Below are positions 712 to 22,400 of a stretch of 64,000 bases of DNA, one piece after another. The first letter of the stretch is position 1, and every line of letters begins with the position of its first letter. The position numbers were made by a program, and so were the translations under genes. Origin of the DNA: Haplodiscus bocki (Eukaryota); the NCBI GenBank assembly GCA_965655095.1, contig OZ296654.1, positions 77,748,001 through 77,812,000 of the forward strand, read 5' to 3'. The notes under the pieces are model-generated. The model was not told the origin of the DNA. It searched no databases and saw nothing but the letters and a program-made list of their open reading frames with translations.

Positions 712-3700
712 CGAAAACTCCCGAGCTCTTTGGCTCAAGCAAAGATTGCTGTGCAGATGCTTTGGTCAGATTTGTGTCAATTTCTGAAGGCGATAAAAAT
801 GCAACTCCTTCAGAAAGCAAAGCGGGATCTGCCCTATCGGGTTTGACTGTTTCCCGAACTTGATTGGAATGGGATTGGGCTGAAAAAGAAGGAATCACTG
901 AGCTGCTTTCAATGTCATTCGTGTGTGTGCCGGACATTAACTCTTCTGGTTGGTATTCTGATATTGTATCGGTCAACATGGTTGTTTTAGGTTCTTTATT
1001 GTTCGTTTCTGCTACTTTCAAGATTGGTTGAAATGCCTCGAGCTCGGATTGGGACATTAAGTTACTTGGATCAGTCGAAGTTATGATCGGTTGAAATTTG
1101 TCAATTGAGTCAAAGGCACTGGGCTCTGCCGAACTCAAATCCTCCTCCGAGCTAGCGACGTCCATTTGCAAAGTTGGGAATGTTGGATAAACTGTTTGTT
1201 TCTCAGGCGCTGAGCCCAAAAGAATGCTGGGGGTGGTTCCCTCGGTTGAATCCATCTTTTTCAGAGGTTCTTTCCTGAAAGTCGAATCTGGTTCCTCTGC
1301 AGGCTGATAGGACGACTCAACGCTCCATTTTCTGCCTGAATCCAATCTTGAGAGTTCTGTTCGTTCTTCTGGAATGCTCTCAGCCGGTGATTTCTTTTTA
1401 GCAGCTTCTGACAAACTACTTAAATTTTCTTCATTGATTTCTTCGTTCAAAGGTTCGACATACTCCACTGACAACTTGATCAACGGTACTTCTTTGAGTT
1501 CTGCGTTTTCTTCAGATACTCCAACATCAGCATTTTCAGGACTAACAGCCTGCTTCAGTGAATCTGCGGAATCCACACTCGACACTGTTTCAACAACAGG
1601 TGTTGCAAACTCCAGAGGTTTGTCACTAGTTGATTCTTCTCCCAGCAAATTAGGCCGACTTTGGATACCATCACGCAGCTGCACGAAAACACTTTCATCC
1701 AAAATTTCAGGATAGGTATCGAAAGTTTCTGAATCTTTTTGCGGAATTGCACGCGAAGTTGCAGATTCCATTTTTCTTGCTTTCGTAGGATCTAGCTCGT
1801 CTTCGTCGATTATTTCCAATGGCGTTTCTTGCTGCGCTTCTGTGACGACTTCACCAACAACAGCTTCCTCATCCAGGACATTTTCAGCCTCTATAGGGAC
1901 AACTTTTTGCTTCTCAAGCTCTTCAATTTGCGCAGTTTCTTTACATTCATCTTCATCCAGTATCGATGGAACCCGGCTTTCACTCTGGCTGGGCAATTCG
2001 TTCACATTTTCTTCAGCAATGGGCGGAATTGCCCTGAATGATACATGTGCAACAGGCTGATCTCGGGTGAGATCCTTGTCCTTATCTAAAGGCGGAGTGG
2101 ACATGAAAATGGGGGTCACTGACTCATAACCTGATTCCAGGTCAGTTGTGAATGAATCAGAAGGGGATCCAGTATGCGGAAGTAACCTGAACCTCGACAA
2201 GGGCTGCGAGAAAGACGTCCCGCCAATGCTGGACAAACTAGAATTGTTGTCCGAAAGGGCTTTAGTCGGAGCCAAAGCGACCGCTTTTACTTCTCCAATA
2301 GATGCCAACCAGTCGATAGCAGGAATTTCAACTTCCTGTTCTTCATTCAGCGACGGCTCGGCTTCACCAACTTTGAAAAGTTTGCCTTGTTTCACGAGTT
2401 CAGAAACAAAAGGCGTATTCATAGGGTACTGTCTGGATTCAACTGCATCCTGGTCACCCATTTCTCGCCTCATTAGCACCAAATCTTCATCTTTGCCTCC
2501 GCATTTTTCAGCTTGAATTGAATATATTTCGCATGGCGTTTCGAAATCGCCTGTGCTGGCAAGACTTACGATTTCCACAGACAATGGAGGTATTTCTTCT
2601 TCCACAATATCTGAAGCAGACTCGTGTCTTTTCCTGGAAATAGTTTGGATTCGTGTCGTTATAGATTCCTGCACCTCTTTTGGGTAATTATCAAATTGTG
2701 ACACTAAGTCGGGCAAAACTTCTTTGATCATAGGATCTTGGTAGAACTGAACGGTTTCTGGTTTTTCTAACCCTTCACCAACAGGCTGAGGTTGCAAGAC
2801 TTTGGACAGCACAATAGATGAGACATCTAAAGTTACTGGTTCATCTTCAGGAAGCTTTGGCTCAACAAATTCCGCTTTGTTCGGAGTCTCTGCAACATCG
2901 CTAACCACAAATTTTTGACATTTTCGCAACAGGCTAGAAATGAATTTCGAAGGTTCCACTGGTTCTTCTTCTGACACTTGCATGAGTTCTGTTTTCGTTT
3001 CGCTCGATGAGCAAATAGTTTCTTTAGCCTTAGATTCGGTTTTCGCAGTCAAAATTGCAACTTCTTGCGTGAAGTCTTCGGTATTGGGAATTCTTTCGGA
3101 GTCTTTCTCATTTTCGGAAGCTTCAACAAAACTCAATCTATTACTTTTCTTTGATTTGATGTTTATTTCTGTAATTCTCTGTTGCAAAGAAGAAGGCACT
3201 TGGCCCGGAAGCACTTCGTAGACATTTTGCTTTTCTTTCTCGTCTGATCCAAGTCTTTCGTGGCTTTCAATGGAAATGGCCTCGCCTAAAGAGTTATCCC
3301 ACAAACTTTTAGGCAGTTCCACAAGGTAAGTTGACTTTTCTGATGGCAATGGGGTTTGCAGCGATTTGGGCAGCTCATTATACTTTATCAATTCATCTAT
3401 AAAAACACATTGTGGTGGGTACCGTCGTATCTCCATGAGTTCTCTCTCTAAGGGCAGCTTGCGGACCTGCAACACACTCAAAAATTTGTTTCCACTTTTG
3501 GCAAACTCTTCGTCCAGTTTTGCCCGTAAAATATCATCAGTTTCGGACATTTTCAAAGGAATAAACGCTTTGGACGGTTTAGGTACTTTAGATTTGGCCT
3601 CTTTCGTTTTGACGGTCTCATAAACGATTTCAGACTTCTCGGAAGACTTCCGATGCTTCAAGTTCTGTGCAAAAACTTTCAGAGCTAAAGTTGTTGTTGA

Positions 3701-6700
3701 GAGTTGATCTTCTTTGATTGATTTCGGAACTCTGCCCAAGTTAATCAATTCTGTGACGTAATCTGAAGCGGGCGGAAACTCTCTCACTTCATTGAAAACA
3801 GCTGAACCCTTCAAGTCCTGCAGACTAGAGGACACAACCACAACTTTTTCAAAATCTCCCTTGACCAATTCAATAACGGATGTACTCAGTTTCAGGTTCG
3901 GTTCATCTCGACTAATTACCTCCCAAGAATTTAATCTCAAGAAGTTTTTCGGTATTTGAGGAAACTTCACAGCTTGGCATATTTGCGTCAGTGTTTTGTC
4001 ATCCACGAACAGGAGTCGCCTTTGTTGCTGCGATGACAAACTTCCGGAAAGCCAATCTGAGTTATTAATTTGCCGATAAAGGTCGTTATTGCCATCCTTT
4101 GAAAAAAGGTAAGGTTGGAAATGATTAGCTGCTTTCATTTTAGAGACCAATTTCGTATCAGAAAAATTATGACAAGGAATTTTTCTTTCTCTGTATTGTT
4201 TCAACGTTGGGCTACAAGCTCGGTGTCTCGTAGTTACTGATACAAAATTTCCTTTCGAATCAACTCCCTTTCGGGACAAATTTACAACTTTCTGTCCACT
4301 TTTCAGCCTCTCTTCTGCCATCTTGACTTCCTGGATGTTCATTTCAGCTTCCAGCAAATCGAACTTGTCAGCATCTATTTTATTCAAGTCTTTCAGAGCT
4401 CGCGGATCCTTAGACGAATCAGGAATTACGGGAACAAAGTCGCTGTTCACTCTCTCATATACTCGCTTCACAACTCGTTCCAGGAATAACCCTTCTTGGT
4501 TCGGGCCATCACATATGAGTTCTCGGTCAGGTTCTTCCAGCAAAAACGGAGCCGGGATCAACCCTTGGTCAACTAGGCTCAGCATTGTAGGCGACTGGGG
4601 TCTGTGAATTTCTTGAGACACCGATTCCTCACCGGTTCCATCGACAAATCTTTCAGTCAACATGACAAGTCTTTCATTTCCATCCTCCACAACATCCTCA
4701 ACTCTGAGAATGTAGACCGCATTGTTGTCTGCTTGCATTTCTGATTTGAAGGATGAAGGATCCCCATCTGGGGTCTCTCGTTTTTTGACCAAAAACTTTC
4801 TCTGGACTACTTCTTCAGTAGATCTGTCATGAACGGGGGTAGCGCAAAAAGATTCGGGTAAAACCCCAGTTTCAACAAGATTGAGAATAGTAGGCGAGTC
4901 CGCTCGATGCACAGTTTCGACATTGACTCCATCTTCGTTGTTGAAAACCCGAATCATCCGTTCTCCGGTTTTTTCATCAGTTCCGTCTTCGATGCGATAC
5001 GACCAAGTATCGTAAGACTGCGGAGCCCCGCTTTCTACAGCTGATTGAAGAAGATTCAGAGACCTCGATGCGGGAGATATTGGCCGTTCCTCAGTCTTTT
5101 CTAGTGTCTTTCTGGAAGTTTTGATGTCTTTGTCAGCCCTCAAAGGCAACTCAAACTGCGGCTGCAAGTCAATAGTGTCAATGTAGGTAATTTGTTTCTG
5201 TTTCTGGTAAGCAGGTAACTTAGCTCTCAGTTTATCCAATTTCTCACTCTCATTGTCGTACTTCCGCTCAAACTCAACTTTGTCGCCAACTTCCGATAGA
5301 TACATTTTCGTTACTAGCGAATATTTCCGCCCATTTTTATCAGTTTTATCTTCAATTTTTACTGTATGCAATGATACTTTCATACCCTCGATTTCTTGCT
5401 CAGAAACCAAAGATTCTGTACTCGACGCAGTTTCCATGTAGCCACTCGCATCGGATCCAGAAGATTTGCGCCTCGAAGATACCATCAGACAATCGATGTT
5501 TGGAGTTTTCGGAGCTGCTTTAACGCCAGCTTCATTTAGTATGTTTAGAACTTCCTCCTCATAATCAGTACCTTTCACTTGCTCCAACAACTTCGGGTCA
5601 TCTAGTCTGAAGTATAGTTTTTCAATGTTTTTTCCTTTACCAACAACTATTTCAATTATTTCATCACTCGCGGATGGCTGATTTCCATCGTCTTTCGACG
5701 GCAACGCGTTTTCTGGAATGATACCAGCGTTGACCATGTCTCTGAGCTCTGGGTCTGTCACTTGATATTCCCAAACTTTCTCGCCATGGCAAGTTTGGAA
5801 CTTCACATACACTCGGTCAACTTCTGTTGAATCCTGTTCGGCTATTTGGTCAACAACAACTGCAACTTCTGAGTCGTTGATTGCGTTCTGTTCAGTCAGC
5901 ATGATCTCCGCAAGTCCCGTGCTCGGAATTTCTCCAAAATCTACCAATATTTTCACAGCAATTTTAAGCATTCGTTCAAAAGTCATTTTCAGGTTACTGT
6001 CTTTCAAAATTTCAAGAAGTTCCGCATCCCGAGGTTTGAACAGCATTGTTTCGGAGTAAAATCTATCTTTTGCGGTGTTATTTTCAGTCTTCAATATTTC
6101 AACTTCCACAAAAACTTCGCTGCAAGAATATGATTGGTTTGGATTCAAATCGCTTGGCAAAGAACCCTCCAATCGGAGCTTTGCAACGTCAGCATCTTCG
6201 GGTGCAAATACTTGTTGTGATGTTTCAACTCTCAAATCTTGTGTCACTTTTGCAGTAATGAGAGAAACTGTGAAACAATTTCTATCATTTGTCCAAATTT
6301 CTTCAAGTTTTCTGCCTTGAACAACTAATGATATGGTTTTATCTTTGGTATGAATAACAATTTTCGGTATTTCAGCGGATTTTTGCACTGGCGTTGACGC
6401 TCTGTTCATCGGTGCTGACACCATTGGTCCTTTTTGCTCGGAATCAAGAAATTCTTCCTCAATTTCACGATCAATTGTGGTGCGAATTTTGGTTTTGGAG
6501 GATTCCAAAATTAAATTGTTGGGTCTGTCAGGGTCATATTCTGACCTGGTTTCTTCAATGCTAGTTTTCAAGTATTTTTCAGAGACCGTCTTAGATGAAA
6601 CAACTGGAAGGCCTGCAACAAACTGGTCGATCGCAGGATCTCCTTTGCGGAACTTTTTTACTTCTTCAACAGTTCGCCCATCTGGGCCTTTCACGACTCT

Positions 6701-7498
6701 CGTAATTTCTACAAAATGATCTTTTTCATAGGCGGTTTTGAACTTTCTTTTTGGCTCTTCTGATTCGACAGGGATAATCTTTTCCACTAAAACTTCCTTT
6801 CCATTGATAATTTCAGTTTCTACACATACTATGAATTTTTCTTCGCTTTCTGGAATCGCGTCGTTTCCTTTTCTAAACAGATACAACAACTCAGCTGCTT
6901 TTGGGTCATCAGGTTTGAAATACTTTGCCTCATTATGAGTCACACCTTTGTCGTCTGTGTACACTCTTGTAATCTCAACCAAACCTCTGATTGATTCTGC
7001 ATCGAAGCTTGACAAATTTTCAGGATCAATTTCACCGCCTCCTTGAAGGAGATCCTGGACCCTCGGATCATCAACTGGAATCCTGATGCCAGTAACCTCC
7101 AATTTGTTGCTACTCGGATCTGTTTCTCTGATGACGTAATAATCGTTTTCCATTTCAACAGAAGTTGTGACAGTTTCTCGTTTCCGTTTACTTGGCCGAG
7201 TTCCTCGCGGAGAGGAAGGATTAACAGGGACAACATAGGGTTTCAATTCAATTGGTTTCTGACCAGGTTCGATTTTTGTATCCTTGAGTGACTCTCCCTT
7301 GACTGCTGCTGCTCTGGCTTTGGCGAAGTCAGGGAGTTGCAGTTTCGGAGGTTTGATGAGCGGAGGTGGTTTCTGAACCACCCTTGTAGTTGTCAGGCCT
7401 TCCGCTCTTTCATTGAACACATCAACATATTGTGATTCGGTTACTGTTTCAGTGATTTGCTTTTCGCGTTCAACTAATGATGGTGCACCGGCTCCTTC
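712..7498 (-). CDS. Plakin exon 14: giant 6,787-nt exon (about 2,262 aa) with repeated domain and acidic disordered region
   Basis: TTTTGCAG|GAA acceptor in phase with exon 13; uninterrupted ORF 521..7513; likely donor TTC G|GTGAGT at 711, after which the composition turns intron-like. Confidence 0.88.
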
Positions 7499-10400
7499 CT
7501 GCAAAACAAACACTTAGGAGTTTTAAACTAACTGATTCGTCAACTTTACAAATTTAACTAGACAATTTCGATTCAATTTTTTGATACTAGCAATTCGCTG
7601 TTCTGCTCAAGGTACGTATACTAGATCATTTGGCTTATAAACTGCTTTGAAGTTTTGGGAGCATCATGACGCTTTCATCTAATAAAGCTAAAAATTTTCA
7701 ACAGTGGTTTTCTTAGATTTTGTGCAAACGACTACCCACGAACCTGAATCTTTTTCAGAAGGTCAGTAATGTCTTTCATTAAAGTTGCTGACTGGAACAA
7801 CAATTGTTGGTATCTGTTGATGACTTCGTCCAAATCTTCACCAAGTTCAGTTCCAGAGGCTCCGGTCAGCCCACAGATGGTCTGTCCTTCAGGCCCACCG
7901 GCACCTGCAGTCATTTGATGGAGCTGTTTGACGTATGTCGTCAGCAAACTGTCAAAGTTTGCAATTTCTTTGATGCATCGATTTCCGCGAGTGTTAACCT
8001 CTTCCAATCTCGAATGATGTCTGGTGACTTCATCGTAAAAATCCTGAGAAACGAACAATAACTTAAGACGCATTCACTTTTTCGAGAAAAGGCATAATGA
8101 AAATCAGTTAAAAAAACGTCAGAAGAGTGAGGTCAAGATCTCGGAAAAGCCCATCATAATCTCGGGTCAAATAAATTATCCCCCAATTGGAGTTTTTTGA
8201 GTCTTTTCACACTTGCAAATTGACTCTGAGGAGAGAATAGTAAAATATCTCCACGCTGAAACACTCACTGACAACAGAAGATTTTAGGCAAGACAGCTAT
8301 ATCTCGTTTAGCTTTTAACTTCATGAAAGGTGTCATATTCGTTCAAGCTCAGTTTCTATTCAGTTGCCCGGTGCTAACATCATGCAATATTTTTCGCCTT
8401 GATGATAAGGCTAAGCATCGAAAAGTTTTGCTGAATTCATCCATAATCAGGAATCCTATCGCTTTTGTCAAGTCCACTTCTACAGCAATACTAACTTTAG
8501 CATCATCCCATTTTCGAGCCAGCTGGCTCACGTAAAGAGCATCTGTTCGTTCTTCTTCCAAAGGTTTCTGACCTCTGTAGGGAGCTTTTCTTTCCATTCT
8601 GTCTAGCCACTTACTCATTTGAACGTAATCTGACAAATAGTTCTTCAGCAGTCCAACTTGTTGGTTGCAAAGTTTCACTCTAAAATACGCCAAAAAAAGA
8701 AGCTTGAGACAATATTCAAGTAAAATTGACAAAAATCTCACATTTTCAAAAAGAACCAAACAAACCGAAAATTTGTCAGAACTTCATTAATATGTTTCCA
8801 GGAATTTTGGGACTCATTCTTTCCTATCGACGAATCTTATCTATTAGTTTATTTCAGTTAGAACAGTTCACACTACATCTATGCAGTGTTGCCAGCAAGA
8901 CGTGCCGCAGTAATATGCCTGAAACTGAACGCATTACTTTTTCAAGTTTGCAGAGAGGAGAAGCTGCGCTTTGCAAGACTTGCGCTAATGGAATTCCAGT
9001 GAACTAATAGAACAAGTATAACTAATTTTTGAAGGGGCCACGGTAATACGGAAGCTACTGATTGAACAATTACACAGATTTTAAAAATCAGTTAATTCTA
9101 ATAAACTTATATACAAGTATAACAAAAACAAACGGCTTTACCAGTTAAAGCGCTTTATATTTAAAACAAGCGCGCACACCGGAGAATAGGACACATGAAC
9201 AAGTTTTTGCAACTGAGCGAGAGCACATGAACAATTTTTTTGCAAGAAAGTGAAAGCTCATGCTCAAAATGCGAGTTGTGAACAGATCCGAGAAGTCCGC
9301 AAAATCCTGTGACATAACACTTGTTTGCGCAATTGTAACACAGAGACAAAGCGGAGCTTCACAAAGCTGACAAAATGAAAGCCTCCAGTTTTTCAAAAAG
9401 TGCGTGGCAGCAGTAGCAATCATTACCGGATGAAAACCTATCAGAATGAATTTGATTTTTTTTAGACATTAATGAGAGAATTCACGACCCAGTTAAATAC
9501 TGAAATTTGCCAGGCTGTCTCAAACTCATTTGGGACTTTTTTTTCAGAAAAAACAGTTCCTCTCTTGAGAAGCTGCGGTTAAAAAATTGAAACAAACATT
9601 TGTTGCAAACGAGGTTTTTATTTCATTTTGGAGAAGAACACCAAACATAGGCGCCCTAAGCAGCGGTGAGGTTTGCTCTTGGCCAAATAAGAATGATTTA
9701 CTAGACTGAGCTGGAAGAATTTGTTCAGAGTAGTGCGCTTAAGTTCTTTTCCTATGTGATGCAGTTTAGCCAAGCCGATAATGTGGAAGACGAACAATCG
9801 GAAAGACTACGAAAAATCGCTGACTTCAGCAGTTTTGGCTGACTCTGGAAAACTAAGTGAGCCACTTTGGAAGTTCGAAATTCTGAGAAAAACAAATCGT
9901 TCAATTCAATTCAACTATATACTAGTCACAAACTTAATTTGGAAAGCAAAGAGCAGAAATAGCAAAATCAACTACTTTCCCAAGCAAAAAACCCATGAAA
10001 CGACCTTTTTCACCAAAATTATCAAAACTATAGGAGGGTATATATCAGCAAAAATACGTCTTCCGATATTGGTTTTTGATGCACTTGTAACTACGAAAGA
10101 GACTTAGCAGACAAAGGATTGATAATTCCGACGTAGTCGAAAAAAAACATTTCTCGTTTACTTTTAACAACTGAAATAATTCGATAACAAACGATTTCTG
10201 ACCGTTTCGCTATCTTCAACTATTTTTGTGATTTTATATTGTATTAATTAAGTCTGCTAGCTAGAAATTTGATATGGACGGCAAAAGGATGAATGTTCTG
10301 GAAAAATCGATAAATTAGCAATACAGACCCAAAACGGAATTTTCTAGTAACCTTTCGAATTTTTGGAGAGGCGAAAACTAACGCATCGTACTGATTTACG

Positions 10401-13400
10401 CTGGATGCGTAGTTAAAAAGATGATTCGTAAGGCAAAAAAAGCAACAATTGCTGAAAAAACAGCAAAATTTCGAAAGTTACAGAAAACTCAAAATTTGCG
10501 GCTTTTTTTCACAAGAAAGTTTCAAGATTTTCGAATATTTTAAGTCGATATTAACATCGTCGAATTCAGCGGGAAAAAGTTGATTTGGTAGGAAGGAAAC
10601 CAAAATCAGGTGCAAATGTCAACAAATTAATCATAAAGGTAGAACTTTCAGCTCAATTTCCATAAGAATTCAAAAAAATCTTCTGGTACCAATATGAAAT
10701 CTTGGTAAGAATTCCAGAAAGTTTGAATTCGGAGTGAACTTGATAAAAATTCCTCAAAGCATCAGAAAAAAGATCTCTCCCTATTGCGAAATTAGTCTTT
10801 TTTTTACCTAAAAAAATTACCAAAAGTGGGAAAAAAGATAATATCGACCGCAAAAGTTTTTGCCGCGATGGGATTCGGACCCGAATGGCCAAAGTGACAT
10901 AGCGCAGATGCTCATTGTCTTCAACTACTTGCCGAAATTTCTTCTGACATTGGCTATATTCATCTCACTATGATCTTGTGCGAGTTGTGAACGCTACGAA
11001 AAATTGCGAGTCGAGCGTAATAAGCAGGCAGTTTTCCAGCTTAATAAAACTAAATTTGAATGTACTAACCGTTCATTGCATTGGTACTGAATATAGTTCC
11101 ACCGTTCCACAATTTCCTGCACTGTCTCCACGACTTCATTTAATAAATCATTACAAGCGGGGTGTTTCACAAGCTGAAGTCGCGAGTTGGATTCTTTAAA
11201 CAGCATATCCGTCATTTTTTCACCAAGTTCCACCATGGCATCAACTTGGGGCTGAATCGCAGCCAATGAGATATTCAAATCTTCACACTTCTCTCTTGTT
11301 TCCAGCAAAGCTCGCTCCTTATTGGGCAACGAGTCTTGCATCTTCAGAGTTCGCTCTAACCGGGTTACGTAATCGCACGTAATAATTGTCATGTGAGAAT
11401 GCAACTTCGTGAAAAGTTTCATTTTGCTGAGTTGAGTTTGAGAAGTTGTCCACGTACGGTCCCATTGGAAACATAAAGTTTTCAACATTTCGGTTGCGTT
11501 AGGATCTTCACACGTAGTGAACCTCAAACTGTTGTATTCGCCCTGAATGGCCGACAAACTTGTCATTATTTTTTCCAGATATTCAATAACTTCTGCAACA
11601 TCTTCCATACTTTTCGGAGCAACCGACAAGGCCTCGCCTAAATGATTCTGCGCGTTGTCGATTCTGGCAAGAAAATCGGCAATCTTCGAGCTCAGGTCTG
11701 AGCTCGGCAAAGGCACACTGGATCTCGCATCTTGTTTCTGCTTCGAACTAAGTTCGTGATAAATCCGGTTGCAAGCTTCCACGTCACTGCTCAACTGTTG
11801 CAACTCGAAAGAAGCTATTTGCTCCGGAGTAACTTCTTTGACCGTTTCAAGCAGCGCACGCGTTTCTTCGTTGAGACTCCTTATCATTGCTTCACGTTCT
11901 ACTTTCTGCATTTCTCGGAATTTTTTGGGGGTCCAGCTTTTTACAGATGCAACTTTCTTCATAATAATGAGACGTTGGCTGGCCATTTGCACTCTCATAC
12001 ATTGTTCTACGCACAGCTCCAAGACCGATTGATATCTCGCCTCCAATCTAAAGCAGGCCATTTCGGGGCTTGACAACGAAATTACAAAAAGCCAAAACAA
12101 AGTTAGAAGATTCCGAATGATTACGCCAAGAAAGGAAAAAAGAATTTCTCCAAGCAATAAATAATTTAGCCAGTAACAAATAATTTGGAGTGGTTGTAAT
12201 TTAGAAGATGCCAGGAACGGCCCAAGTCGCAAAATATCCAAGGCAGGCTAAAAAAAACTAAGGCTTTTCAGATGAGAAAATTGGTAAAGCAATTTTTCTC
12301 TCAAAATTTGGTTGCACAGCGCTTAAAGTTTAGTAGAGGGACTTTTTGTTACAATATTTACTCCCTGCGACATTCATTAGTGCCAGGACTATTGGTATAT
12401 GCCTACGCAATGTAAGGAGGCATCACAAAAAAAATTTCGGTTCGGATTCTCGAATTGTTTTCGTGGACATGAACCTTCTTCCGCATATGTGATCTCTAAT
12501 GCTCGTCCAGTAACTAATCAGTACCTGGAAATTTCAAATTATAATCTTGACCTACTGAACATCTGGGCACTTCGTCGAGTCAGAGTGAAAAAAAACACAA
12601 GTCAATGTAATAGTTGGGCTCTGTTTTAGTAAAAGCACCGACTAAACAACTTGAAAATATGGAAAATTTGAAAAAAACTACCACTTTACAGAATCAATAA
12701 CGTCAGAAGCTTCAGCAAGCCAAGAATGGCCAGAGTCGGCGCCTCCCTACAGCTCTTAAATACTCGTAGGGGGATCCCATAATGTATTTATAGTTTTGGT
12801 CTTTTCAAGAAATGTCTGTGAAACAAAGGGAAGTTTACTAGTTCCTCAATTATCCGCCAGAATTCTTGCAGAATTTTAGGGCAGATAGTCGAAAGTGGGC
12901 CCGAGTTTCCATAACTTTAGAGAATAAAAATGACAAACTTTCGTTTTTTTCGTCAAGGTTGGCGTATAATCGAGTCCGTCGGATGTTTACATCATTGAAA
13001 GAAGCATGGACGGTAAATTGGCACAATTTTCGGACACTCAGGGATAACTGGGGTGCATCGTGATATTTTCTCGTGTTTTCCGGAAAAATTTCGAAGCATA
13101 ATTTTGCTCTTTCTTGAAAAATATATATATGTATACCGACGGTAATTTCAAGAATCGCTCGATTTTCCGCCAACAATCGTGCAGCCTTTCTGGGGTGATA
13201 ACTGAGGGCATAGCAGACTGATAGAGGGCCAGAGTTCGAGTATTTTGTTTTCAACTATGAAGTCAGAAGTGTAATTTTGATTAGGTTGGCGTACAATCGA
13301 GTTTGGTGGATAATTATTTCATCCAAAAAACAAACCGGCAAAAGTGACGGAAATTCGAAAGGCATACAAGAGAGGGACAATTGGGGGTGTTTTCTGAAGG

Positions 13401-16400
13401 TTTTTCTGGCATGCGTTATAAAAATTATCCGTTTTATGCAACAATCAAGAAAATTTTCCGAATTTTCCGTGTGCCCTTGAAAATTTTCCGATACACGCAC
13501 AGGTAGGTATCACGCAGACTTGGTAGCTTAAGCTGGTCCTGTAAATTTACTAAATAAAAATTTTACCGAGGAGTGAGAAAGAACGGTGAGGTCGGTTCGA
13601 ATAGAGAATATTGTCTTTCGAGGAAAAGTTATTGTAATACTCCGTCTCATCATTTGAGTAAAGCGCTGACTAAAAACAACTATTTTACCACGTGTGTATC
13701 GTGCCAGCTGGCGATTACACCATTATGTAACTGTGGAAAAATGATTTGAGAATTTTTTCTCCTTATATGAAAATTCAAAAATTAGTGGTCAAAGCAAAAA
13801 ATATCGGCAAAGCATCAATCTGAAACACAATAGAACACTGGAGGAAAAAAGCGTAGGAAAAGATTCAAAAGTTTTCAATTTTGCTCGCGAGATGTCAAAA
13901 TGCGCTTATTTCTTTTCGCGCCATATTTTGAAATACGCAAGAAAAAATATTAACTTTTATTATTTTTCAAAGAAGTTTCGCTGATAATTTTACAAGTAAA
14001 TTAAATGAATTAGACAGCGATTTGAACCTCCCACTCTTTCGACTTCGTAGACTTGAAGCTTAACCTCTCAACAACATAACCATAAACTGGTTAGAAAATT
14101 CTCAATGATTTATGTATTTTTCGATAAAACATTAGCCGAAAAAAATTTGCCAGTTTTAGCCAATTGTTTTGTTTATTTTTCGCCACACAATTTTAAAAAT
14201 GTAAGAAAAAATATTCATTCAGGACGGGTCGTTTTTCTCTTTTAGTCTATTTTTGCCAACTGTTTTTATTCAGAAACAAATCTCAGCAGAGGGGTTAGGA
14301 AAAGAATTTTCCATGCAGTAGGTCCTGGTTGGAATCTCCGTCGGGTCATATATTTTATGATTTTACTGACATTTGTCAGATTTTCCAAGTGCTCACATGG
14401 CAAAGGGGGTAAGAAAAGAGGGTTCTGAAGCGCTAGGTAGGGGTTCGAATCACAGCAATTACCTATAAATTTTGAACTTTATTATTACGACTTCGAATTT
14501 TTAGGATTGCTTCCTGTTAACTCCAATTAAAATTATCATTTTCCGTCGGTTTTTAATCGGTGCTTCATGAATTTAAAACCTGACTTTTGTGGGCACTTTC
14601 GTTTTGTTTTGATTATTTTAATCTGTCTTTTCAAGATCGCAACGAATTTTCTATTTTTTCCTTAAGTGTTATCCCCGGCATATTATTTTGAAGCATGCAA
14701 GTGCACTCTATGTTAAGCACAGTCAAGTACTCACATACAATAAAAGATCCCTTCTACGAAACATTCTGGTACTGTAAGACAAAAAATCTCGAGGACGAAT
14801 CGGTATAAACCTCTTATGCATAAAGTTTTTTTGATACCAAAAAATTTCAGAAACACACAAGGGTTCCTCCTACGGAATATTTCGGTACTATCAGACTAAA
14901 TTTTTTGATGAAAATTCGTGATACTCCAGTTTCGAATAGTCTGTTGCTACCGGAGACTTTGAGAAAAACCAAAAGGGCCCCCTGACGAAATTTTCCAGCA
15001 AACAAAGAGTTTTCAACATCTTTTAATAATACAGGCAACTATGGTTCACTAAAATTTTCGATCCAGATAAATAGGCAGCGCTAAAAAGACACTAGAAGCT
15101 TTGCAATTACACATTATCATCGATAACTACATTTTTTGGGAAACGTTTCCTCATCGCAAACTCTAGGGACCGGAAAAGCGAGAAAGAGCAAAAGTTTTCG
15201 ACTTTTTCTGAGAATCAAACCTTTTGTTCTCCAAAAATACATCTGCAAGTCGTCCGTTAGGGTATTAATCGACACTTTTCTACTCGCAAGAAATTACTTG
15301 ACCACCAAACAATGCATTTATTTCCGGGAACCGTAAAGCTGATCGGCTAAAGTAAATTAGCCAGAAATTGAACATTGGTCTGATCCGTCTTGATATTTGA
15401 ACTCGGTTTCCCTCAAAGCAAATGTCAGGAATTCTTCCTTTAAGGTCTCAAAATTTTTTTTGTACAAGATGATTCAGTATCCAAATCTTTTTGTTTCATC
15501 CTTTCTTCGAAAATTTGATAGGCCCAATTTGCCAAATGTTATGTATTTGTATGATGCTTCATTGTAATAGAACCAATTTTTTCCATAGCTACCGGCTGCA
15601 TTTCTTCATCAAAAGAAGTTTATATTTTGAATAATTTTGAAAAGCGAAAGTGTAATTGCTCTCAGCGGACACTTGGTTGGCTGAGCATTCCAAAAGTTGC
15701 ACATGCACGTGGTTCTTCTTGAGATTCCAACTCATCTCTCCAAAACCATTGACTGGACTTCTTCCATAAAGGTCCCAGTGGACAATTTTATTTCTGTAAA
15801 GCGTTACTGGATAAACATATTCCCAAAGACGTTCCCTGCTTCCGTAATCTGTTAGGCTGGAATTTGCCAAAGCACGATTTGCAGAGGCTTTTCTCTAGAG
15901 TCGAACTCTCCTCTCTAAAAGTACTGGCTGGATTCCCGCAATCAAGATCTCACAAGATAGTTTCCAATTTTCAAAAGTTAATTCAGAGAAAATATCTCAG
16001 TTCTAATACTTTGCTTCGGAGGCCGGGGAAAACGATAACGCCAAGAATTATAGAAATCAATGGTGAAATTGATGTTTGTGAAAAACCTTCGATATCTAGA
16101 TTTTAAAGCAGAATTCTCGTTTCTAAATGTTTGCAAACGTTGATCAAAGCGAAAAATATGACGGTCCTAGCCGGCCGCCCTGTTTCACTTTCATTGCAAA
16201 ATTAAATAAAGGCGCCGAGATGCTTTTGTCAGCTGATACGGAAAACAGTAAGATTGTGAAGTGGCTTTTTATCGTAGGATGAGATTCTCATACCGAACCC
16301 ATCTAATATAGACATGGTTGATTTTTTTGCCATAGTTTGGTACCACTGATCCTCCGAGACAGCATGAGCGGTATCAGAAGCTTTTTCGAAACATCCACAT

Positions 16401-19400
16401 TTTTTCATTCTTTTCATTTGCAGTTCAAACAAGTCAAAAAGATACATGATTCGCAACAGAACGTACTGAAAATATTAATCACCTTCTGCAAATTCGAAAA
16501 TAATTTGTGAAGAAAAAACTAGACGCCCGACTACCATCTGAATCATTAGCATCTTGCAAATTTTTTGAGAATAGCGTTTCAGCGAGAATTGCCCTTTCCA
16601 ATGGGTTGTACAGCAACACCAATACATTAAGACCAATTTAAAACTTCCGAGATTGTTTTGAAAGAATACTAAAATTCGGTTTCAAATAGGCATTTTCAAG
16701 TATTATTATTCTTTTATGTTCTTCTTTACAGGGCACAGTTGCTACTTTCACTCATTTCAAAAAAAATCATTTAATTGATTTTTTTCAAACTAGAGGCAGA
16801 AAAGCTTTTGCATACGATCGATGGAACTTTTTACTAGACAATTTATGGCTAGAAAAAAATTTTCAAATAATGTTTGATTTCGCCAGACTATGGAAATAAA
16901 CATCTTTTTCAAAACTGTTGAACTAACAAAACGATTTCAGTTGAACAATACCAAGAAAAAGAATGGAATCACCCGATTATCGACACCGGACAAAATCTAC
17001 CTATAAAAGGTGTTCTTTTATTAGCTCTGGATGAAAGAAATTAAATGGGTAGTTGAAGAGAAACATTTTGAAATATCCTTACAAAGCGATGTTTAGAGCA
17101 ACATTTTCTCAAAAAAGCTCCGCTGACCCAGACAATTCAACTAGTACGAACAGAATCGGTCCCATATTTGATAGGACTCGATTTTAACGCTGTAAAAAAT
17201 GATATTTGGCGGCTTCAGCTAGCATTGAAATGAATCTCCAAATGAAAGTATACCTAGAGTTGGCACACCTGGGATTGCGCCGAAGAGAAAATTATCAACA
17301 TTCTAGACCTGAATGAGCGGCAAAAATTGATTCGTCGTTTATTATTCTGTGTTTAAAAATTGCGAGATGAATATGGTGCGAAAGCAGCACATTTCCGAAG
17401 AATCAATAAAACTTACCGTGTACAAGTTTTTTCTTGAGAGTCATTTGAAAAGCAGCTAAAATAAACATTCTCAGCTAAAGGAGGGAAGAATTCCAGCTGT
17501 GAAAATTCCTGGTTTGCACAGGGTTGCTACGATGGGTCAAACAACAATGACTCGATGAGCTTGATATCAGCAAGAAATGGATTGACCGTTGAAATGGCAT
17601 TTCGAACAAGGGGCAACATTGTTAGAAAACGACATCGGTTGTAGGACAGCAAGCGTTATCGATCAGCAGTTTTGTCTGGTAGTTTGTGATTTTGGTTTGA
17701 AGAAATGCATTAGCGACTTGATGCTACAGACATGCTGCTTGACCGACGGAATTCGTGTTGGAAAGGAATGGCAACTCTGGCATGGACGCAGTGGCTGAAG
17801 ATTGGAAAAGCAGCACTTCAAGCAGAGACTCACAATTTATCAATTCTGGGATGCAGTGGAATGCAGATAATGATACATTCGAAAATTGCGTTGGTACTGA
17901 TAAAAAAAGCCGAAGAAAAGCACCCAGTGCTTTTCTTTGTGACATCAGGGTTGGGCCCATTTGAACCATTCACTATGAGAATGCGCATCCTCCTGAAAAC
18001 AATTTGGTCCAGGACAACAGTGGAATAAAAAATTGCTAGTGAAAATGAAGAGCAGTTCCTGAATTGGTTCCAGTAGTTGGCTCAACTACGGTGCATGCCA
18101 TTCAAAAGAGGCTATATCGACCGAAAGTACGAGAAAAGACGTGAAAAAATTTTTAGATGCCTCTGGAATCAATTTTTATAGTGGCTCACCTGCAAGGCAA
18201 GATGATGCTGGAAAGTATTCGTCACTGAGAAGTGCAGATTTGTTCAACTAAAAAAGAAAACGTCACCCAAACTGGAACTGCAGGCAGCACTATACTGTGA
18301 CATTGAGGCAGTTGACTGCCGAAGACCATGATATCCAGATCCAGACATTGGCACACTGCACAGATTCAATTACTATGCTCCAACAGTTACAATCTTCGCA
18401 CATGGACCACGCTGTGTTTGCCAAACGATGAATGCCAGATCATTGACACCAGTGAGTGTGGATCCGGAAGATTTAGAAGCACTTACACCGAATCATTTTC
18501 TGTTGGAACGACCACTGGCGGCGGAGCCACTGATGCCAGATTCGGTGAGATACGTTGACTGTCGGAAAATGTAAAAAGTGGCTCAAGCTCACAATCAGAT
18601 GATAGGGAACAGATGGGCTGAAAAAACTACCCAAGTGGAATGTGCGACCGAAAAAGGCTACTGAAGACGTTGAGAGTTGGAGTTTGACACACAGAGTAAG
18701 TTCGACGACATTAGAACAAAATGGCGCGACTGACCGAAGTAATCCCTGTAGCTGCTGGTGTCATCTGACCAGCATCAATCAAGACGAACGATGGGATCCT
18801 TCGAAGACCCACAGTGAAGCTGGCTCCAGTGTTATATGAGTGTTTTCGAGATGAAAACAGGGCCGTCGATGTTGTCGACCTTCACTTGCGTTACATTCAA
18901 AGATAACAGTATCGCACAATTTTTGTTCTCTGCTTTAGTAGTCGAAAGCAGAGAGGACCAGTGACCTACGAAAGCTTACATGAGTTCATGGGATTTGAGT
19001 CAGCCGTTACAACTACCAAAAAGTTCAGATCAATGATTGAGTTCTATATGTCCTTTTTCAAGCAAAGAAACAGTAAATCTTTCGTGAATCCACGTCAATA
19101 TTCAGCCTTATTAAAACCGGAGACCTGAGGCATGTATCCGAGGCTCAGTAGCTTCCAAATTATTACACCTTAAAAGCGCGATTAACCTGCTCCTTTGCTG
19201 CTATCATTTTGTTTTCGTAAATTGTCCCAAAGCTTTCTGTGATACACGAGGTGGAAGTAGCATCAACACGCGAGAAAACGATGACAAAATGAGCCAACAA
19301 GAACTCCGCGGTAACTTATATAAAATTCGCTAGTTCAGGTAAATCAAGAAAAATAGTAAACACTGACTTCTACCCAATTCACTAAATTCAAAACTAACAG

Positions 19401-22400
19401 GAAGAAGATGGATCCAGAACATACGTAGTACCCATTCCCAAAACATAATAATTGTTCGTAAGAAACAAGGACGAAATTTTGCAATAACTTTGCCAACACC
19501 AAAAAATTTACAACAATGTTGAAACCGACAATTTTTGTGACAACCTTTTGCTTATACAACAAATTTTTCAAAGCTTACCAACAGAAAAGGTACCGCTGTA
19601 AAAATTGATTATTGGTATGCACAATACAAAGTTTTTTTTCTAGAAAAAGCGGATGAAATTCCGATACCCACTTTCGTAATTCAACGCTAAATGTAGGTCC
19701 GCGATGCATAAATGCACTGGAACAGATTGAAGGCTTACTTTACAATTATAATTCGATTTCAAACGTCTCGATAAAAGATTATGAGATAAACCTATAGAGT
19801 CGAATACACTCGGCTTAAATAATCAAAATATAGCCGCCCAAGGCGGTTAGGACTTCGGAAAATTTTTGAGATATGTATTTCAGAAACTACTGCGTCATGG
19901 TGACTACGGTGAGTGCCGTTCATCATCAGAAAAATTTCGGATGTCCAGAAAAAATCATCACCTGCGATTGGCCAGTCCTCCACCTGGATACTACGTCGGA
20001 TTATTATCAAGTTTTCCATACTTCAAATTTGCCACCCAGTCTCACAACGAAGTACTTCCTTCCAAAGCTCTGTACCAAGTTGGAATACTTCCAATGTTTG
20101 AAAAGTTAGTCAACAAGTTGACGCAGTTCGCAAATGGCGACATCTTGACCCGGTGACCGAACCGGATTAGAATTGAAAATATTCCCCAATTCAACTTTGC
20201 CAGCCACTATCACTACCAATCACTTTCTGTCTAACCGAAGCACAGAGGTTGAAATGATTTTAATGTTCATTCAGGTTTTAGTCGGCGCTTTTCCTTTAAC
20301 AAAAAAGCCCATTCCTGTAGTTACCTAGCTTTTCTGTTTTAAGATCACAACGAATTGCCAACTTTTTAAAAAGTTTTTTTTCTCAAGCATATCATTTTAA
20401 AGCATGCAATTACAGTCTATAACAATTACGGGCAAGTACTTACAAACACTAGAAGGAGTTTTCTATGAATTTTTTCGGCACTGCGAGACAAAAAAAGTTC
20501 GTGCGTGCAAAAATAGTGATACCCCTCTTATGTATAAAATTTTTTGACACTCGGTACTGTGAGGGTTTTCTTAACACCCCCTCCATGGTTTACTCTAATT
20601 GCGCGCGACATTGCAGGATGTCGTACGGAAAAGCGTCAAAAAAACACGAGTAACACTACAAGTACTAGGAAAAACTAAATTTTGCAAAATGAAATGACGT
20701 GATAGTGAGCTAAGAACCTTTCGGCAAACTCTACGGCATCCTTGGAAGGTGGCTGTATAGTAAGTATGATCGAGGGCGTCTTTCCACTTTTGCCGTTAGG
20801 CAGTTTCACAATCCAATCACATTCCATTTTGGAAACAATGGACACTTTTTCACCTCTGTTGACCGTCATCTGGTAAGTGAGAGGTGAGCTACACAACGCC
20901 ATGGCTTGCACGTCTTGATCAACTGATGAAACTGCTCTGAGTTCCATCGGATAAACTTGTTTGCCTTTCTTGATTATGTTGCCAAGGATCTCTTTGTGTT
21001 CCACGAGTAATTCTCGCATATCCTATGGAAACATTACCATATAGATTAACTATGATTATCATGAAAAAATCAGAGATTATGTTGATCTTGATTATGAAAA
21101 ATCTTGATTATGTTGCCCAGGATCTCTTTGTGTTCCACGAGTAATTCTCGCATATCCTATGGAAACATTACCATATAGATTAACTATGATTATCATGAAA
21201 AAATCAGAGAATTAAAAAGGTAAAAACTTACGGAAAAGAAATTCAAACACGGCAATTGATTCAGACCATGCCGACAGCTCGATATCAAAATTTAACGGAT
21301 CACCAAAATATAGGAAGGTTTGATTTAAGCAGTGATGTACAATTAAAGGATCATTTTTAACGACAGGTTAGGACCCTTTCTATTTTTATTAGTTTCTATC
21401 GAAATAATTTATACTATGTTCATTTAAATTATTGTTTGGTTTAAAAAGCCCAAAAATTGTAAATTATTTCGAATTTAGGTCTATTATATATGAAATCAAC
21501 GCCAGACAAGACTTTTACATTGTGAACACCGCGATTACAAGCTATTTATTTGGAGATGTTAAAACTGGCTCATATACTCTGGTGAACCGCATTATGGGGG
21601 GGGGGATACAAATAGTAGGGGGTCCAATAAACGTCTCGGGCAATAATAGGTGGGGTCTAAATGAAAAGGGTGTTCTAAAAATGAGCTTATGGCACTGCGT
21701 AATAACACCTTCGAACTTCGACTACACGCTATAATAGCGCTTTATTGCTAAGCAGCTTTTGCATAAAGAATTTTGCATTTACAGTACTGGAAGACTGACT
21801 ATTCGACAATAATTGAGTCCATTTCTTTACAATCGCACGCTTTTGAGGATTCCGAACTCTTATCAGGGGGTTCTGATTAGAAGGGGGATTTGCAGATTTC
21901 AACGCTTAGATACTACCCGGTAACTTCTTTTATATTGGTTTGTTAGATTAGTATTGATCATCTCATAAGATCAAATTGCAAAATTCGACCAATTATGTGC
22001 CTTTAGACATTAAAAACTAAGACTGATAAAACTTGGGATTTAGCGAATTGAGCAAAAATTCCAATCACGTCGAAAAATTGCACAATATTCAAAGAAGCGA
22101 AAATTTCGCTTTCGATGGTCTAATTGTCTATTCTTGCCGCCTTGAAGTTTGCAATTTTTCGACGCTTTGTGAATCCAGAATAAAAGTAAATAATAAGTAA
22201 TTATCACGTTGACTTAAGCGCTCAGCCTCGCGCAGTAGGCCAATCACGTCGGCTTTGCGAAAAAAGTAAAATCTATAGGCTTTAAGACAAGCTTAATGCA
22301 TAATAAAAATGTATATCACAGTGTAATTTTGATACGAGCCAAAACGAAACTGGCCATCATTTACAATTCTTACCCACCAAAATATTGAAAAAGTTTGCCC

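What the first reader, a model, noticed from the sequence alone, without database searches (positions are those of the whole stretch)
2370..7150. Unfamiliar ~45-60 aa repeat domain (about 14 copies) in the giant plakin exon
Seen: the exon repeats a unit of 2-3 beta-strand-like segments (VEITRV, YRIED, LRVED) followed by [YFH]xxx[DS][PAD]x[hydrophobic]xxL[VI]xxGx[IL]P. Examples: [15 protein letters not shown] (about 7050), [195 protein letters not shown] (about 2390). The first copies come in pairs. Established: MACF1, dystonin and Shot carry a large exon of 38-aa plakin repeats at this position, after the plakin domain. Inference: this is either an extremely diverged plakin-repeat derivative (LVxxGxIP echoes AxxxGLI; GGEIDPE and DEKTGERM echo GGIIDP and DPxTGERL) or a new lineage-specific domain that replaced it, possibly binding a lineage-specific filament or junction partner.
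Basis: partly seen in the sequence, partly recalled or inferred. Interest (0 to 1): 0.75.

Follow-up and report, generated by a model that had tools for sequence, protein, structure and literature searches.

The report
Orphan beta-alpha repeat array in spectraplakin
A 6.8-kb exon of a giant cytoskeleton-linker gene encodes about 13-14 copies of a small, undescribed strand-strand-strand-helix module; it is strongly conserved in a few related animals and sits in front of the ordinary plakin repeats rather than replacing them.

Summary
The minus-strand exon (window 712-7498) lies in a spectraplakin gene and carries an internal repeat of about 55-65 aa. None of 168 comparisons with conserved non-repeat control segments went below 4.5e-3. 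The first copies do form double modules.

- The module is not a diverged plakin repeat. There is no PF00681 match, and hhalign against 34 genuine plakin repeats of the same gene gives P 0.1-0.26. The AlphaFold2 models are low-confidence but show three strands plus a short helix, and neither model matched a solved plakin-repeat structure.
- It did not replace the plakin repeats. A 4,418-aa open frame 18 kb downstream on the same strand carries at least 34 canonical plectin repeats, and a GAS2 domain follows further on.

The whole 1,800-aa region is under strong purifying selection (dN/dS about 0.05, with dS saturated). It is collinear with a paralogue on another chromosome. In an exhaustive HMMER search of 1.84 billion representative proteins it matched only five close kin.

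I read it as a lineage-restricted structured scaffold of the giant plakin-repeat isoform. No RNA data were available, and function is inferred.

The parts
712..7498 (-). Giant exon A (6,787 nt, about 2,262 codons). It starts in phase 0 and ends with one base of the next codon.
   Evidence: Acceptor ttgttttgcag|GAAGGA and donor TTCG|gtgagt. It is in frame with the upstream exon's donor CAG|gttcgt at 7743/7742. dN/dS against the 76-82%-identical orthologue is about 0.06, with dS saturated.
2024..7396 (-). Conserved structured region (aa 40-1830): the repeat units plus equally conserved linkers.
   Evidence: Conservation is even across four orthologues and one paralogue and drops after aa 1840. 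It is collinear with the C6 paralogue at 31.7% identity over aa 72-1801. dN/dS is 0.046 in the units and 0.050 between them.
712..2023 (-). Poorly conserved acidic tail of the exon (aa 1831-2267).
   Evidence: Column identity is 0.0-0.44 and dN is 0.278, against 0.100 for aa 40-1830.
7022..7201 (-). Unit u145 (aa 105-164). This is the weakest copy and the first half of double module 1.
   Evidence: It has the motif and strand pattern and aligns as the A half of a double module. Its best hhalign partner reaches only P 0.017, and the leave-one-out test does not support it.
6860..7039 (-). Unit u199 (aa 159-218), the second half of double module 1.
   Evidence: Leave-one-out score 33.7 bits, beaten by 0 of 20 shuffles. 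hhalign against u288 gives P 3.6e-7.
6593..6772 (-). Unit u288 (aa 248-307).
   Evidence: Leave-one-out score 22.1 bits, 0 of 20 shuffles. hhalign P 3.6e-7.
6149..6328 (-). Unit u436 (aa 396-455), the first half of double module 2.
   Evidence: hhalign against u970 gives P 3.2e-5. It aligns in the double-module alignment. The leave-one-out test is weak.
5981..6160 (-). Unit u492 (aa 452-511), the second half of double module 2.
   Evidence: hhalign against u199 gives P 6.9e-4. Leave-one-out: 3 of 20 shuffles reach its score.
5708..5887 (-). Unit u583 (aa 543-602), the first half of double module 3.
   Evidence: AlphaFold2 predicts three strands plus a helix. hhalign against u1246 gives P 3.1e-4.
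5552..5731 (-). Unit u635 (aa 595-654), the second half of double module 3: a hairpin plus two helices.
   Evidence: Leave-one-out score 28.9 bits, 0 of 20 shuffles. AlphaFold2 predicts strands at residues 75-80 and 87-92 and helices at 96-102 and 108-117 of the model. hhalign against u199 gives P 3.9e-5.
5201..5380 (-). Unit u752 (aa 712-771).
   Evidence: hhalign against u1097 gives P 1.1e-4 over 52 columns. The leave-one-out test does not support it.
4850..5029 (-). Unit u869 (aa 829-888), HRxxSPT type.
   Evidence: hhalign against u970 gives P 2.4e-13. AlphaFold2 predicts three strands plus a helix. The HRAxSPT motif is invariant in all kin.
4547..4726 (-). Unit u970 (aa 930-989), HRxxSPT type and the best-modelled copy.
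   Evidence: AlphaFold2 pLDDT is 69-86, with three strands and two short helices. hhalign P 2.4e-13.
4166..4345 (-). Unit u1097 (aa 1057-1116), HRxxSPT type.
   Evidence: hhalign against u970 gives P 9.2e-8. Leave-one-out: 1 of 20 shuffles reaches its score.
3719..3898 (-). Unit u1246 (aa 1206-1265).
   Evidence: hhalign against u1696 gives P 1.3e-6. Leave-one-out: 0 of 20 shuffles.
3362..3541 (-). Unit u1365 (aa 1325-1384).
   Evidence: hhalign against u1246 gives P 2.6e-6. Self-BLAST of aa 1341-1415 against 1672-1745 scores 34.7 bits, above every shuffle.
2369..2548 (-). Unit u1696 (aa 1656-1715).
   Evidence: Leave-one-out score 12.7 bits, 0 of 20 shuffles. hhalign P 1.3e-6.
7743..8073 (-). 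Upstream exon that ends ...LLKKIQ in phase 0 and would splice onto exon A.
   Evidence: Donor CAG|gttcgt, in frame with the acceptor of exon A.
10997..32589 (-). Upstream plakin-domain and CH exons of the same gene: spectrin-like at 10997-12241, SH3_10 at 20678-21019, spectrin at 26389-27264, CH at 31984-32589.
   Evidence: Pfam: CH 1.9e-25, spectrin 2.4e-11, SH3_10 4.9e-7, Spectrin_2 4.2e-4.

Best explanation
Exon A encodes a lineage-restricted array of about 13-14 small modules of 55-65 aa. Each module has three (sometimes two) antiparallel strands. An aromatic residue follows, then a [DS]-P helix N-cap, an amphipathic helix of about 8 residues, and G-x-[ILV]-P. The modules are joined by linkers that are conserved just as strongly.

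The array grew by internal duplication. The evidence is three A+B double modules, a run of three HRxxSPT units, and the related units u1246, u1365 and u1696. This happened before the gene duplicated into the C7 and C6 paralogues.

It is not derived from plakin repeats and does not replace them. The inferred protein order is: CH, plakin domain, beta-alpha array (exon A), about 2,000 aa of acidic disordered sequence (the tail of A, ORF B, the start of ORF C), one more unit, at least 34 plakin repeats, and much further on a GAS2 domain.

Inferred mechanism: the array is a folded, beads-on-a-string scaffold. It lengthens the giant junction-associated plakin-repeat isoform and offers many conserved docking surfaces between the junction-binding plakin domain and the filament-binding plakin repeats. 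The acidic stretch behind it would act as a flexible tether.

Shown: the repeat, its conservation, its neighbours, and the absence of detectable relatives. Inferred: that exons A, B and C are spliced together, the fold, and the function.
For: Repeat is real.

Coding and constrained: dN/dS about 0.05 with dS saturated. Orthologues at 82, 54 and 49% identity. A collinear paralogue at 31.7% identity.

Host gene: CH, SH3_10 and spectrin exons upstream. Plectin repeats lie 18-31 kb downstream on the same strand. GAS2 is on the same strand at C7:77594243. Splice sites are in phase: upstream into A, and A into B or into C.

Same protein: in relative P0005 the units (aa 100-1760), an acidic stretch (1750-4000), further units (4057, 4801) and plakin repeats (4912-7400) lie in one 7,577-aa open frame.

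Not plakin repeats.

Fold: AlphaFold2 gives strand-strand-strand-helix in u869, u970 and u583, and hairpin-helix-helix in u635.

No relatives: 5 hits among 1.84 billion representatives. The Atlas feature searches gave no usable hit. PDB searches were empty.
Against: No RNA run holds this stretch. Inclusion of the exon and its junctions therefore rest on splice-site phase, synteny and the single-ORF relative.

The AlphaFold2 models are low-confidence: mean pLDDT 58, pTM 0.33-0.38, from alignments of only 8-16 sequences. The fold and the independence of the modules are not established.

Fold searches gave only generic ties: best Z 4.6, Foldseek E >= 0.065, Atlas TM <= 0.37. Weak matches do not show that a fold is new.

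The exhaustive search used aa 650-1810 only. The N-terminal half was covered only by the length-limited word search.

The host lineage evolves fast and is thinly sampled, so failure to detect relatives could reflect divergence rather than true novelty.

Nothing here tests binding or mechanics.
Confidence: 0.7

Rival explanations
1. The units are extremely diverged plakin (plectin) repeats, so exon A is an old, decayed part of the plakin-repeat region.
For: The units lie directly upstream of genuine plakin repeats, and one unit lies inside the plakin-repeat exon. The B-type unit u635 is predicted as hairpin plus two helices, the same element order as a plakin repeat. There are short echoes such as GGEIDP.
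Against: No PF00681 match on the exon; 1 of 65 units matches at E 0.17. hhalign of the units against 34 plakin repeats of the same gene gives P 0.1-0.26, against 2e-18 for the positive control. The unit HMM finds nothing in the plakin-repeat region, aa 1700-4418 of ORF C. The unit is 55-65 aa with three strands, not 38 aa. No plakin repeat domain appears in two PDB-wide structure searches.
Confidence: 0.06
2. There is no discrete domain. The region is a conserved, largely disordered scaffold whose strand-prone segments and short linear motifs recur because of composition and local duplications, and fold only on binding.
For: AlphaFold2 confidence is low (mean pLDDT 58), and the linkers are below 50. 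The linkers are as conserved as the units, which is typical of motif-rich scaffolds. The language-model 'recognition' score is low.
Against: The same strand-strand-strand-helix pattern is predicted in four different units, with pLDDT up to 86 despite 8-16-sequence alignments. The alternating hydrophobic strand patterns and the helix N-cap motif are kept across paralogues at 32% identity. Profile-profile P values reach 1e-13 over 40-54 columns.
Confidence: 0.17
3. The 2,330-codon frame is not part of the spectraplakin transcript. It would be a separate nested gene, or an alternative terminal exon used without the plakin repeats.
For: There is no RNA evidence. The exon is asymmetric in phase (0 in, 1 out), so it cannot simply be skipped as a cassette. 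The databases hold it only as stand-alone ORF calls.
Against: It has a canonical acceptor and donor, in frame with the upstream exon and with acceptors in ORFs B and C. The same order of spectrin and SH3 exons, giant ORF, then a further giant ORF is seen in two other species. In P0005 the units and the plakin repeats share one open frame.
Confidence: 0.07

Closest known systems
Giant plakin-repeat exon of spectraplakins (Drosophila Shot 10.5-kb exon, MACF1b, BPAG1b, VAB-10A)
   Same: It is a multi-kilobase single exon inserted after the plakin domain and before the spectrin rod. It encodes a long array of small repeats separated by gaps, as described for Shot in PMC2173965. This gene has such a plakin-repeat exon too.
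   Different: Exon A is an additional exon in front of the plakin-repeat exon. Its units are 55-65 aa, strand-rich, and unrelated to PF00681 by profile comparison.
Plakin (plectin) repeat, PF00681
   Same: Both are small strand-then-helix repeats in the same protein. Both have a helix followed by G-hydrophobic. The B-type units share the order hairpin then two helices.
   Different: There is no HMM or profile-profile similarity. The length differs (38 against 55-65 aa), most units have a third strand, and no structural match was found.
COMM domain and PUR repeat (small three- or four-strand sheet plus helix units that work in pairs)
   Same: These are the recurring weak structural ties of both models: COMMD chains at Z 3.5-4.4, rmsd 2.7-3.4 over 48-57 residues, and Pur-alpha at Z 3.0-3.9. 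Like them, the first units here occur as pairs.
   Different: The Z values are below the level the tool itself calls a common arrangement. There is no sequence similarity, and no pairing was predicted (pTM 0.33-0.38). This is a description of shape, not of kinship.

Membership tests
Plakin/plectin repeat (PF00681) | Match to the Pfam Plectin HMM above its 20.5-bit cut-off | tested here: not met
   There is no Plectin hit on the 2,330-aa frame at E <= 10. Only 1 of 65 single units matches, at E 0.17. The same model scores 93-135 bits on the downstream ORF C.
Plakin/plectin repeat (PF00681) | Profile-profile similarity to genuine plakin repeats | tested here: not met
   hhalign of the unit alignments (A2, A6, A-type, B-type) against 34 plakin repeats of the same gene gives P 0.099-0.26 and probability below 1%. 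The control of plakin-repeat half against half gives P 2e-18.
Plakin/plectin repeat (PF00681) | A 38-aa unit made of a beta-hairpin and two antiparallel helices, packing into globular repeat domains | tested here: inconclusive
   AlphaFold2 gives three strands plus one or two short helices in 55-65 aa for u869, u970 and u583, and hairpin plus two helices for u635. Mean pLDDT is only 58. No plakin repeat domain appears among the PDB matches.
Spectraplakin (host gene) | N-terminal calponin-homology actin-binding domain | tested here: met
   PF00307 CH, E 1.9e-25, at window 31984-32589 on the minus strand. Only one CH exon was examined.
Spectraplakin (host gene) | Plakin domain: spectrin repeats with an embedded SH3 | tested here: met
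   SH3_10 at E 4.9e-7, Spectrin at 2.4e-11, Spectrin_2 at 4.2e-4, on minus-strand exons between 10997 and 27264.
Spectraplakin (host gene) | Plakin repeats and a C-terminal GAS2 domain in the same gene | tested here: inconclusive
   Both lie on the same strand downstream: plectin repeats at C7:77717585-77725591 and GAS2 at C7:77594243-77594368 (72 bits). Linkage in one transcript was not testable because there are no RNA runs.
COMM domain / PUR repeat | Significant structural or sequence similarity | tested here: not met
   Best Z is 4.4 (COMMD) and 3.9 (Pur-alpha), with no chain at Z >= 5. There is no Pfam hit.

The most novel reading that the evidence does not exclude
The beta-alpha unit is a genuinely new protein domain family and fold. 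It would have been invented in one small animal lineage (earlier notes of this scan say acoel worms). It then multiplied to about 14 copies and became an indispensable cytoskeletal or junctional binding array of two giant plakins, that is, a new kind of cytolinker repeat beside spectrin and plakin repeats.
Probability: 0.2. Interest if true: 0.6.

Novelty: new variant of a known kind. Interest (0 to 1): 0.45.

Why it matters
Spectraplakins are described as combinations of a fixed set of modules: CH, plakin domain, plakin repeats, spectrin repeats, EF-hand and GAS2.

Here two paralogous plakin genes carry an additional 1,800-aa block built from a repeat with no detectable relative anywhere else, and selection has kept it as tightly as a housekeeping domain. 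If the unit folds as predicted, it adds a new building block to giant cytolinkers. It would also give a handle on what is attached to cell junctions or filaments in this poorly studied animal lineage.

The plakin repeats are present and intact, so nothing was replaced.

Tried and rejected
- **Pfam on the exon, the units and the neighbouring giant ORFs.** Only chance hits on exon A, and nothing on ORF B.
- **PDB sequence searches.** phmmer with aa 101-1404 and hmmsearch with the unit profile found nothing below E 0.2.
- **ESM Atlas.** Two feature searches gave no usable hit. The structure search gave TM <= 0.37.
- **Structure searches.** Foldseek against PDB gave no E <= 0.001. VIA-align wide on both models gave best Z 4.6 and 4.4. 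I therefore rejected COMM, PUR or any other fold assignment.
- **First HMM iteration.** An HMM seeded from two units found only those two, because the model was too narrow. I replaced it with leave-one-out and sub-alignment tests.
- **Overlap artefacts.** The two very low hhalign P values for u436-u492 and u583-u635 come from overlapping segment ends. I discarded them and recomputed without overlaps.
- **EB1-type SxIP motifs.** The G-x-[IL]-P ends do not fit [ST]-x-[IL]-P (read from the sequence).
- **HRxxSP as a kinase or 14-3-3 site.** This is less likely than a structural helix N-cap, because S/D-P starts the predicted helix in every unit.
- **RNA evidence.** The look-up of sequencing runs returned only DNA-type holders from one study.
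- **Organism.** I could not identify it with the tools. Earlier notes of the scan disagree (acoel in many notes, coral in two).
- **Spliced model.** I did not build or search a joined protein model. Every search was exon by exon, by reference, so the joined-model step is left out.
Full report
**What is there**

The window is G000:C7:77748001-77812000. On the minus strand a 2,330-codon open frame runs from 7513 to 521. The polypyrimidine-AG acceptor at 7500-7499 and the GTGAGT donor at 711-710 delimit an exon of 6,787 nt, window 712-7498. The next exon upstream ends ...LLKKIQ with donor CAG|GTTCGT in phase 0, in frame with exon A.

Further upstream on the same strand lie exons that Pfam recognises as Spectrin_2, SH3_10, Spectrin and CH (E 4.2e-4, 4.9e-7, 2.4e-11 and 1.9e-25).

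**Is the repeat real?**

Four tests bear on chance.

- Self-BLAST gives seven off-diagonal pairs of at least 25 bits, against 0-1 in each of twelve block-shuffled exons.
- In a leave-one-out HMM test, six units (u199, u288, u635, u869, u1246, u1696) outscored every window of 20 shuffled exons. Four more (u970, u1097, u583, u492) were equalled or beaten by only 1-3 of the 20. Four (u145, u436, u752, u1365) were not supported on their own.
- I used an eight-sequence alignment of orthologues and paralogues to make a sub-alignment for each unit and for twelve equally conserved non-unit control segments, then ran hhalign all against all.
  - 31% of unit-unit pairs reach P < 1e-3, against 0 of 168 unit-control pairs and 0 of 66 control-control pairs.
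  - I removed three pairs whose segments overlapped. After that, 13 of 14 units keep a partner at P <= 7e-4. Examples are u869-u970 at 2.4e-13, u1097-u970 at 9.2e-8, u199-u288 at 3.6e-7, u1246-u1696 at 1.3e-6, u1365-u1246 at 2.6e-6 and u436-u970 at 3.2e-5. Only u145 stays weak, at P 0.017.
- The unit HMM finds an untrained copy (27 bits; shuffled maximum 5.9) in the next giant exon.

The first copies are indeed paired. Segments aa 110-226, 392-520 and 545-662 align over two consecutive units.

**Constraint and relatives**

A word-indexed search found three orthologous giant ORFs at 82, 54 and 49% identity. They are conserved evenly from aa 40 to 1830 and poorly after that.

- Against the closest orthologue, dN/dS is about 0.05 both in the units and between them, though dS of about 2 is saturated. 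The tail has three times the dN.
- The unit profile found a second locus in the same genome, a 1,975-aa frame on C6. It is collinear with exon A at 31.7% identity over aa 72-1801 and lies upstream of its own 4,027-aa plakin-repeat frame.
- An exhaustive HMMER search used a 1,162-position profile (aa 650-1810, five sequences) against 1.84 billion representative proteins. It returned five proteins, all of them these orthologues and paralogues.
- All of them come from unnamed ENA assemblies.

Many earlier notes of this scan call the genome an acoel worm, and two call it a coral. I could not test this. The handful of related, unannotated assemblies fits a thinly sampled lineage.

**What surrounds it**

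Downstream on the same strand I found three features.

- A 985-aa acidic open frame (ORF B, C7:77730771-77733725).
- A 4,418-aa open frame (ORF C, C7:77717213-77730466). ORF C starts with about 700 acidic residues and has one clear beta-alpha unit at aa 766-825. From about aa 1618 to 4296 it carries at least 34 canonical plectin repeats; PF00681 scores 135, 93 and 131 bits on its three pieces.
- A GAS2 domain on the same strand 123 kb further on.

Exon A ends with one base of a codon. Both ORF B (...tgtttag|AG) and ORF C (...cttttag|AT) offer acceptors that complete that codon in frame.

In a relative, the C6-type paralogue P0005 is a single 7,577-aa open frame with the same order:
- units at aa 100-1760;
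- about 2,200 acidic residues;
- two more units, near aa 4057 and 4801;
- plakin repeats at aa 4912-7400.

This is the best evidence that the array and the plakin repeats belong to one protein. The same gene order (spectrin and SH3 exons, giant ORF, further giant ORF) is seen on the contigs of P0003 and P0001.

**Is it a plakin repeat?**

No test supports that.

- Pfam finds no Plectin match on exon A. Of 65 single units, one matches at E 0.17, and no family is hit by more than one unit.
- hhalign of four versions of the unit alignment against the 34 repeats of ORF C gives P 0.099-0.26. Two halves of the plakin-repeat set match each other at 2e-18.
- The unit HMM finds nothing in the plakin-repeat part of ORF C.

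Because canonical repeats are present downstream, the idea that a new domain 'replaced' them is refuted.

**Fold**

Two AlphaFold2 runs gave mean pLDDT 58 and pTM 0.33-0.38. One covered aa 826-1000 with 8 sequences. The other covered aa 545-662 with 16 sequences, including the two other double modules.

- The best unit (u970) reaches 69-86.
- The secondary structure is consistent across units: three antiparallel strands, then a helix that starts at the S/D-P, then often a second short helix. The B-type unit u635 has a hairpin and two helices.
This is my inference.

Searches of the PDB gave nothing beyond generic three-strand-plus-helix ties. VIA-align wide was run on both models, with best Z 4.6 and 4.4. 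The Foldseek PDB search (best E 0.065) and the Atlas structure search (TM <= 0.37) used only the aa 826-1000 model. The ties were COMM domains, Pur-alpha and small ribosomal proteins, with no plakin repeat domain among them. Given the model quality, this shows neither a known fold nor a new one.

**How it most likely works**

- Shown: a constrained, internally duplicated array placed between the plakin domain and an acidic stretch plus the plakin repeats.
- Inferred: the array is a folded, segmented scaffold of the giant isoform. The conserved linkers carry motifs such as [40 protein letters not shown] and [11 protein letters not shown]. These suggest many docking sites rather than a mere spacer. 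The acidic 2,000 residues behind it would act as a flexible tether to the filament-binding plakin repeats.
- For Drosophila Shot, plakin-repeat isoforms were reported at adherens junctions (PMC2173965). A junctional role here is an analogy, not a result.

I put 0.7 on 'new, lineage-restricted repeat module added to a spectraplakin' and much less (about 0.3) on the scaffold mechanism.

**Limits**

- No RNA run holds this stretch.
All searches were by exon and by reference.
- The N-terminal half of the exon was not part of the exhaustive search.
- Full HHpred libraries were not available.
- No literature on acoel spectraplakins was found.

Noticed in passing
G000:C7:77261695-77271087 (minus strand, about 456 kb downstream of the window's gene): There is a second, degenerate copy of the plakin-repeat exon, including its single beta-alpha unit. 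It is broken into open frames of 1506, 931, 373 and 210 aa. It could be a segmental duplication or pseudogene, or an uncollapsed haplotype. Exon A has no copy there.
   Followed up: no
G000:C6:13717289-13723216 (L026:3289-9216, minus) and C6:13651458-13654637: A paralogous plakin gene carries a 1,975-aa A-like exon, collinear with exon A at 31.7% identity, and its own 4,027-aa plakin-repeat frame about 64 kb downstream. No GAS2 hit was found on C6.
   Followed up: partly
G000:C7:77730771-77733725 (L011/L012, minus), between exon A and the plakin-repeat exon: A 985-aa open frame is rich in D, E and P, has no Pfam match, and shows no BLAST similarity to the acidic ORF at the same place in a relative. 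It is probably a fast-evolving disordered giant exon with a phase-compatible acceptor.
   Followed up: partly
P0003, alignment A1 columns about 370-460 (L001): One related species has a tandem duplication of about 90 aa covering the stretch after unit u288 (...KFREGDNEIEKL... repeats ...TFQKGDPEIENF...). This shows that unit-scale duplication is still going on.
   Followed up: partly
window 35795-36136 (minus) and 47888-48319 (plus): ORFs inside introns look like fragments of mobile elements; the first resembles the cysteine/histidine tail of a non-LTR retrotransposon reverse transcriptase. This was read from the translations only.
   Followed up: no
G000:C7:77594243-77594368 (minus): A GAS2 domain exon (72 bits) lies 123 kb downstream of the plakin-repeat exon. 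If it is one gene, the locus spans at least about 190 kb.
   Followed up: no
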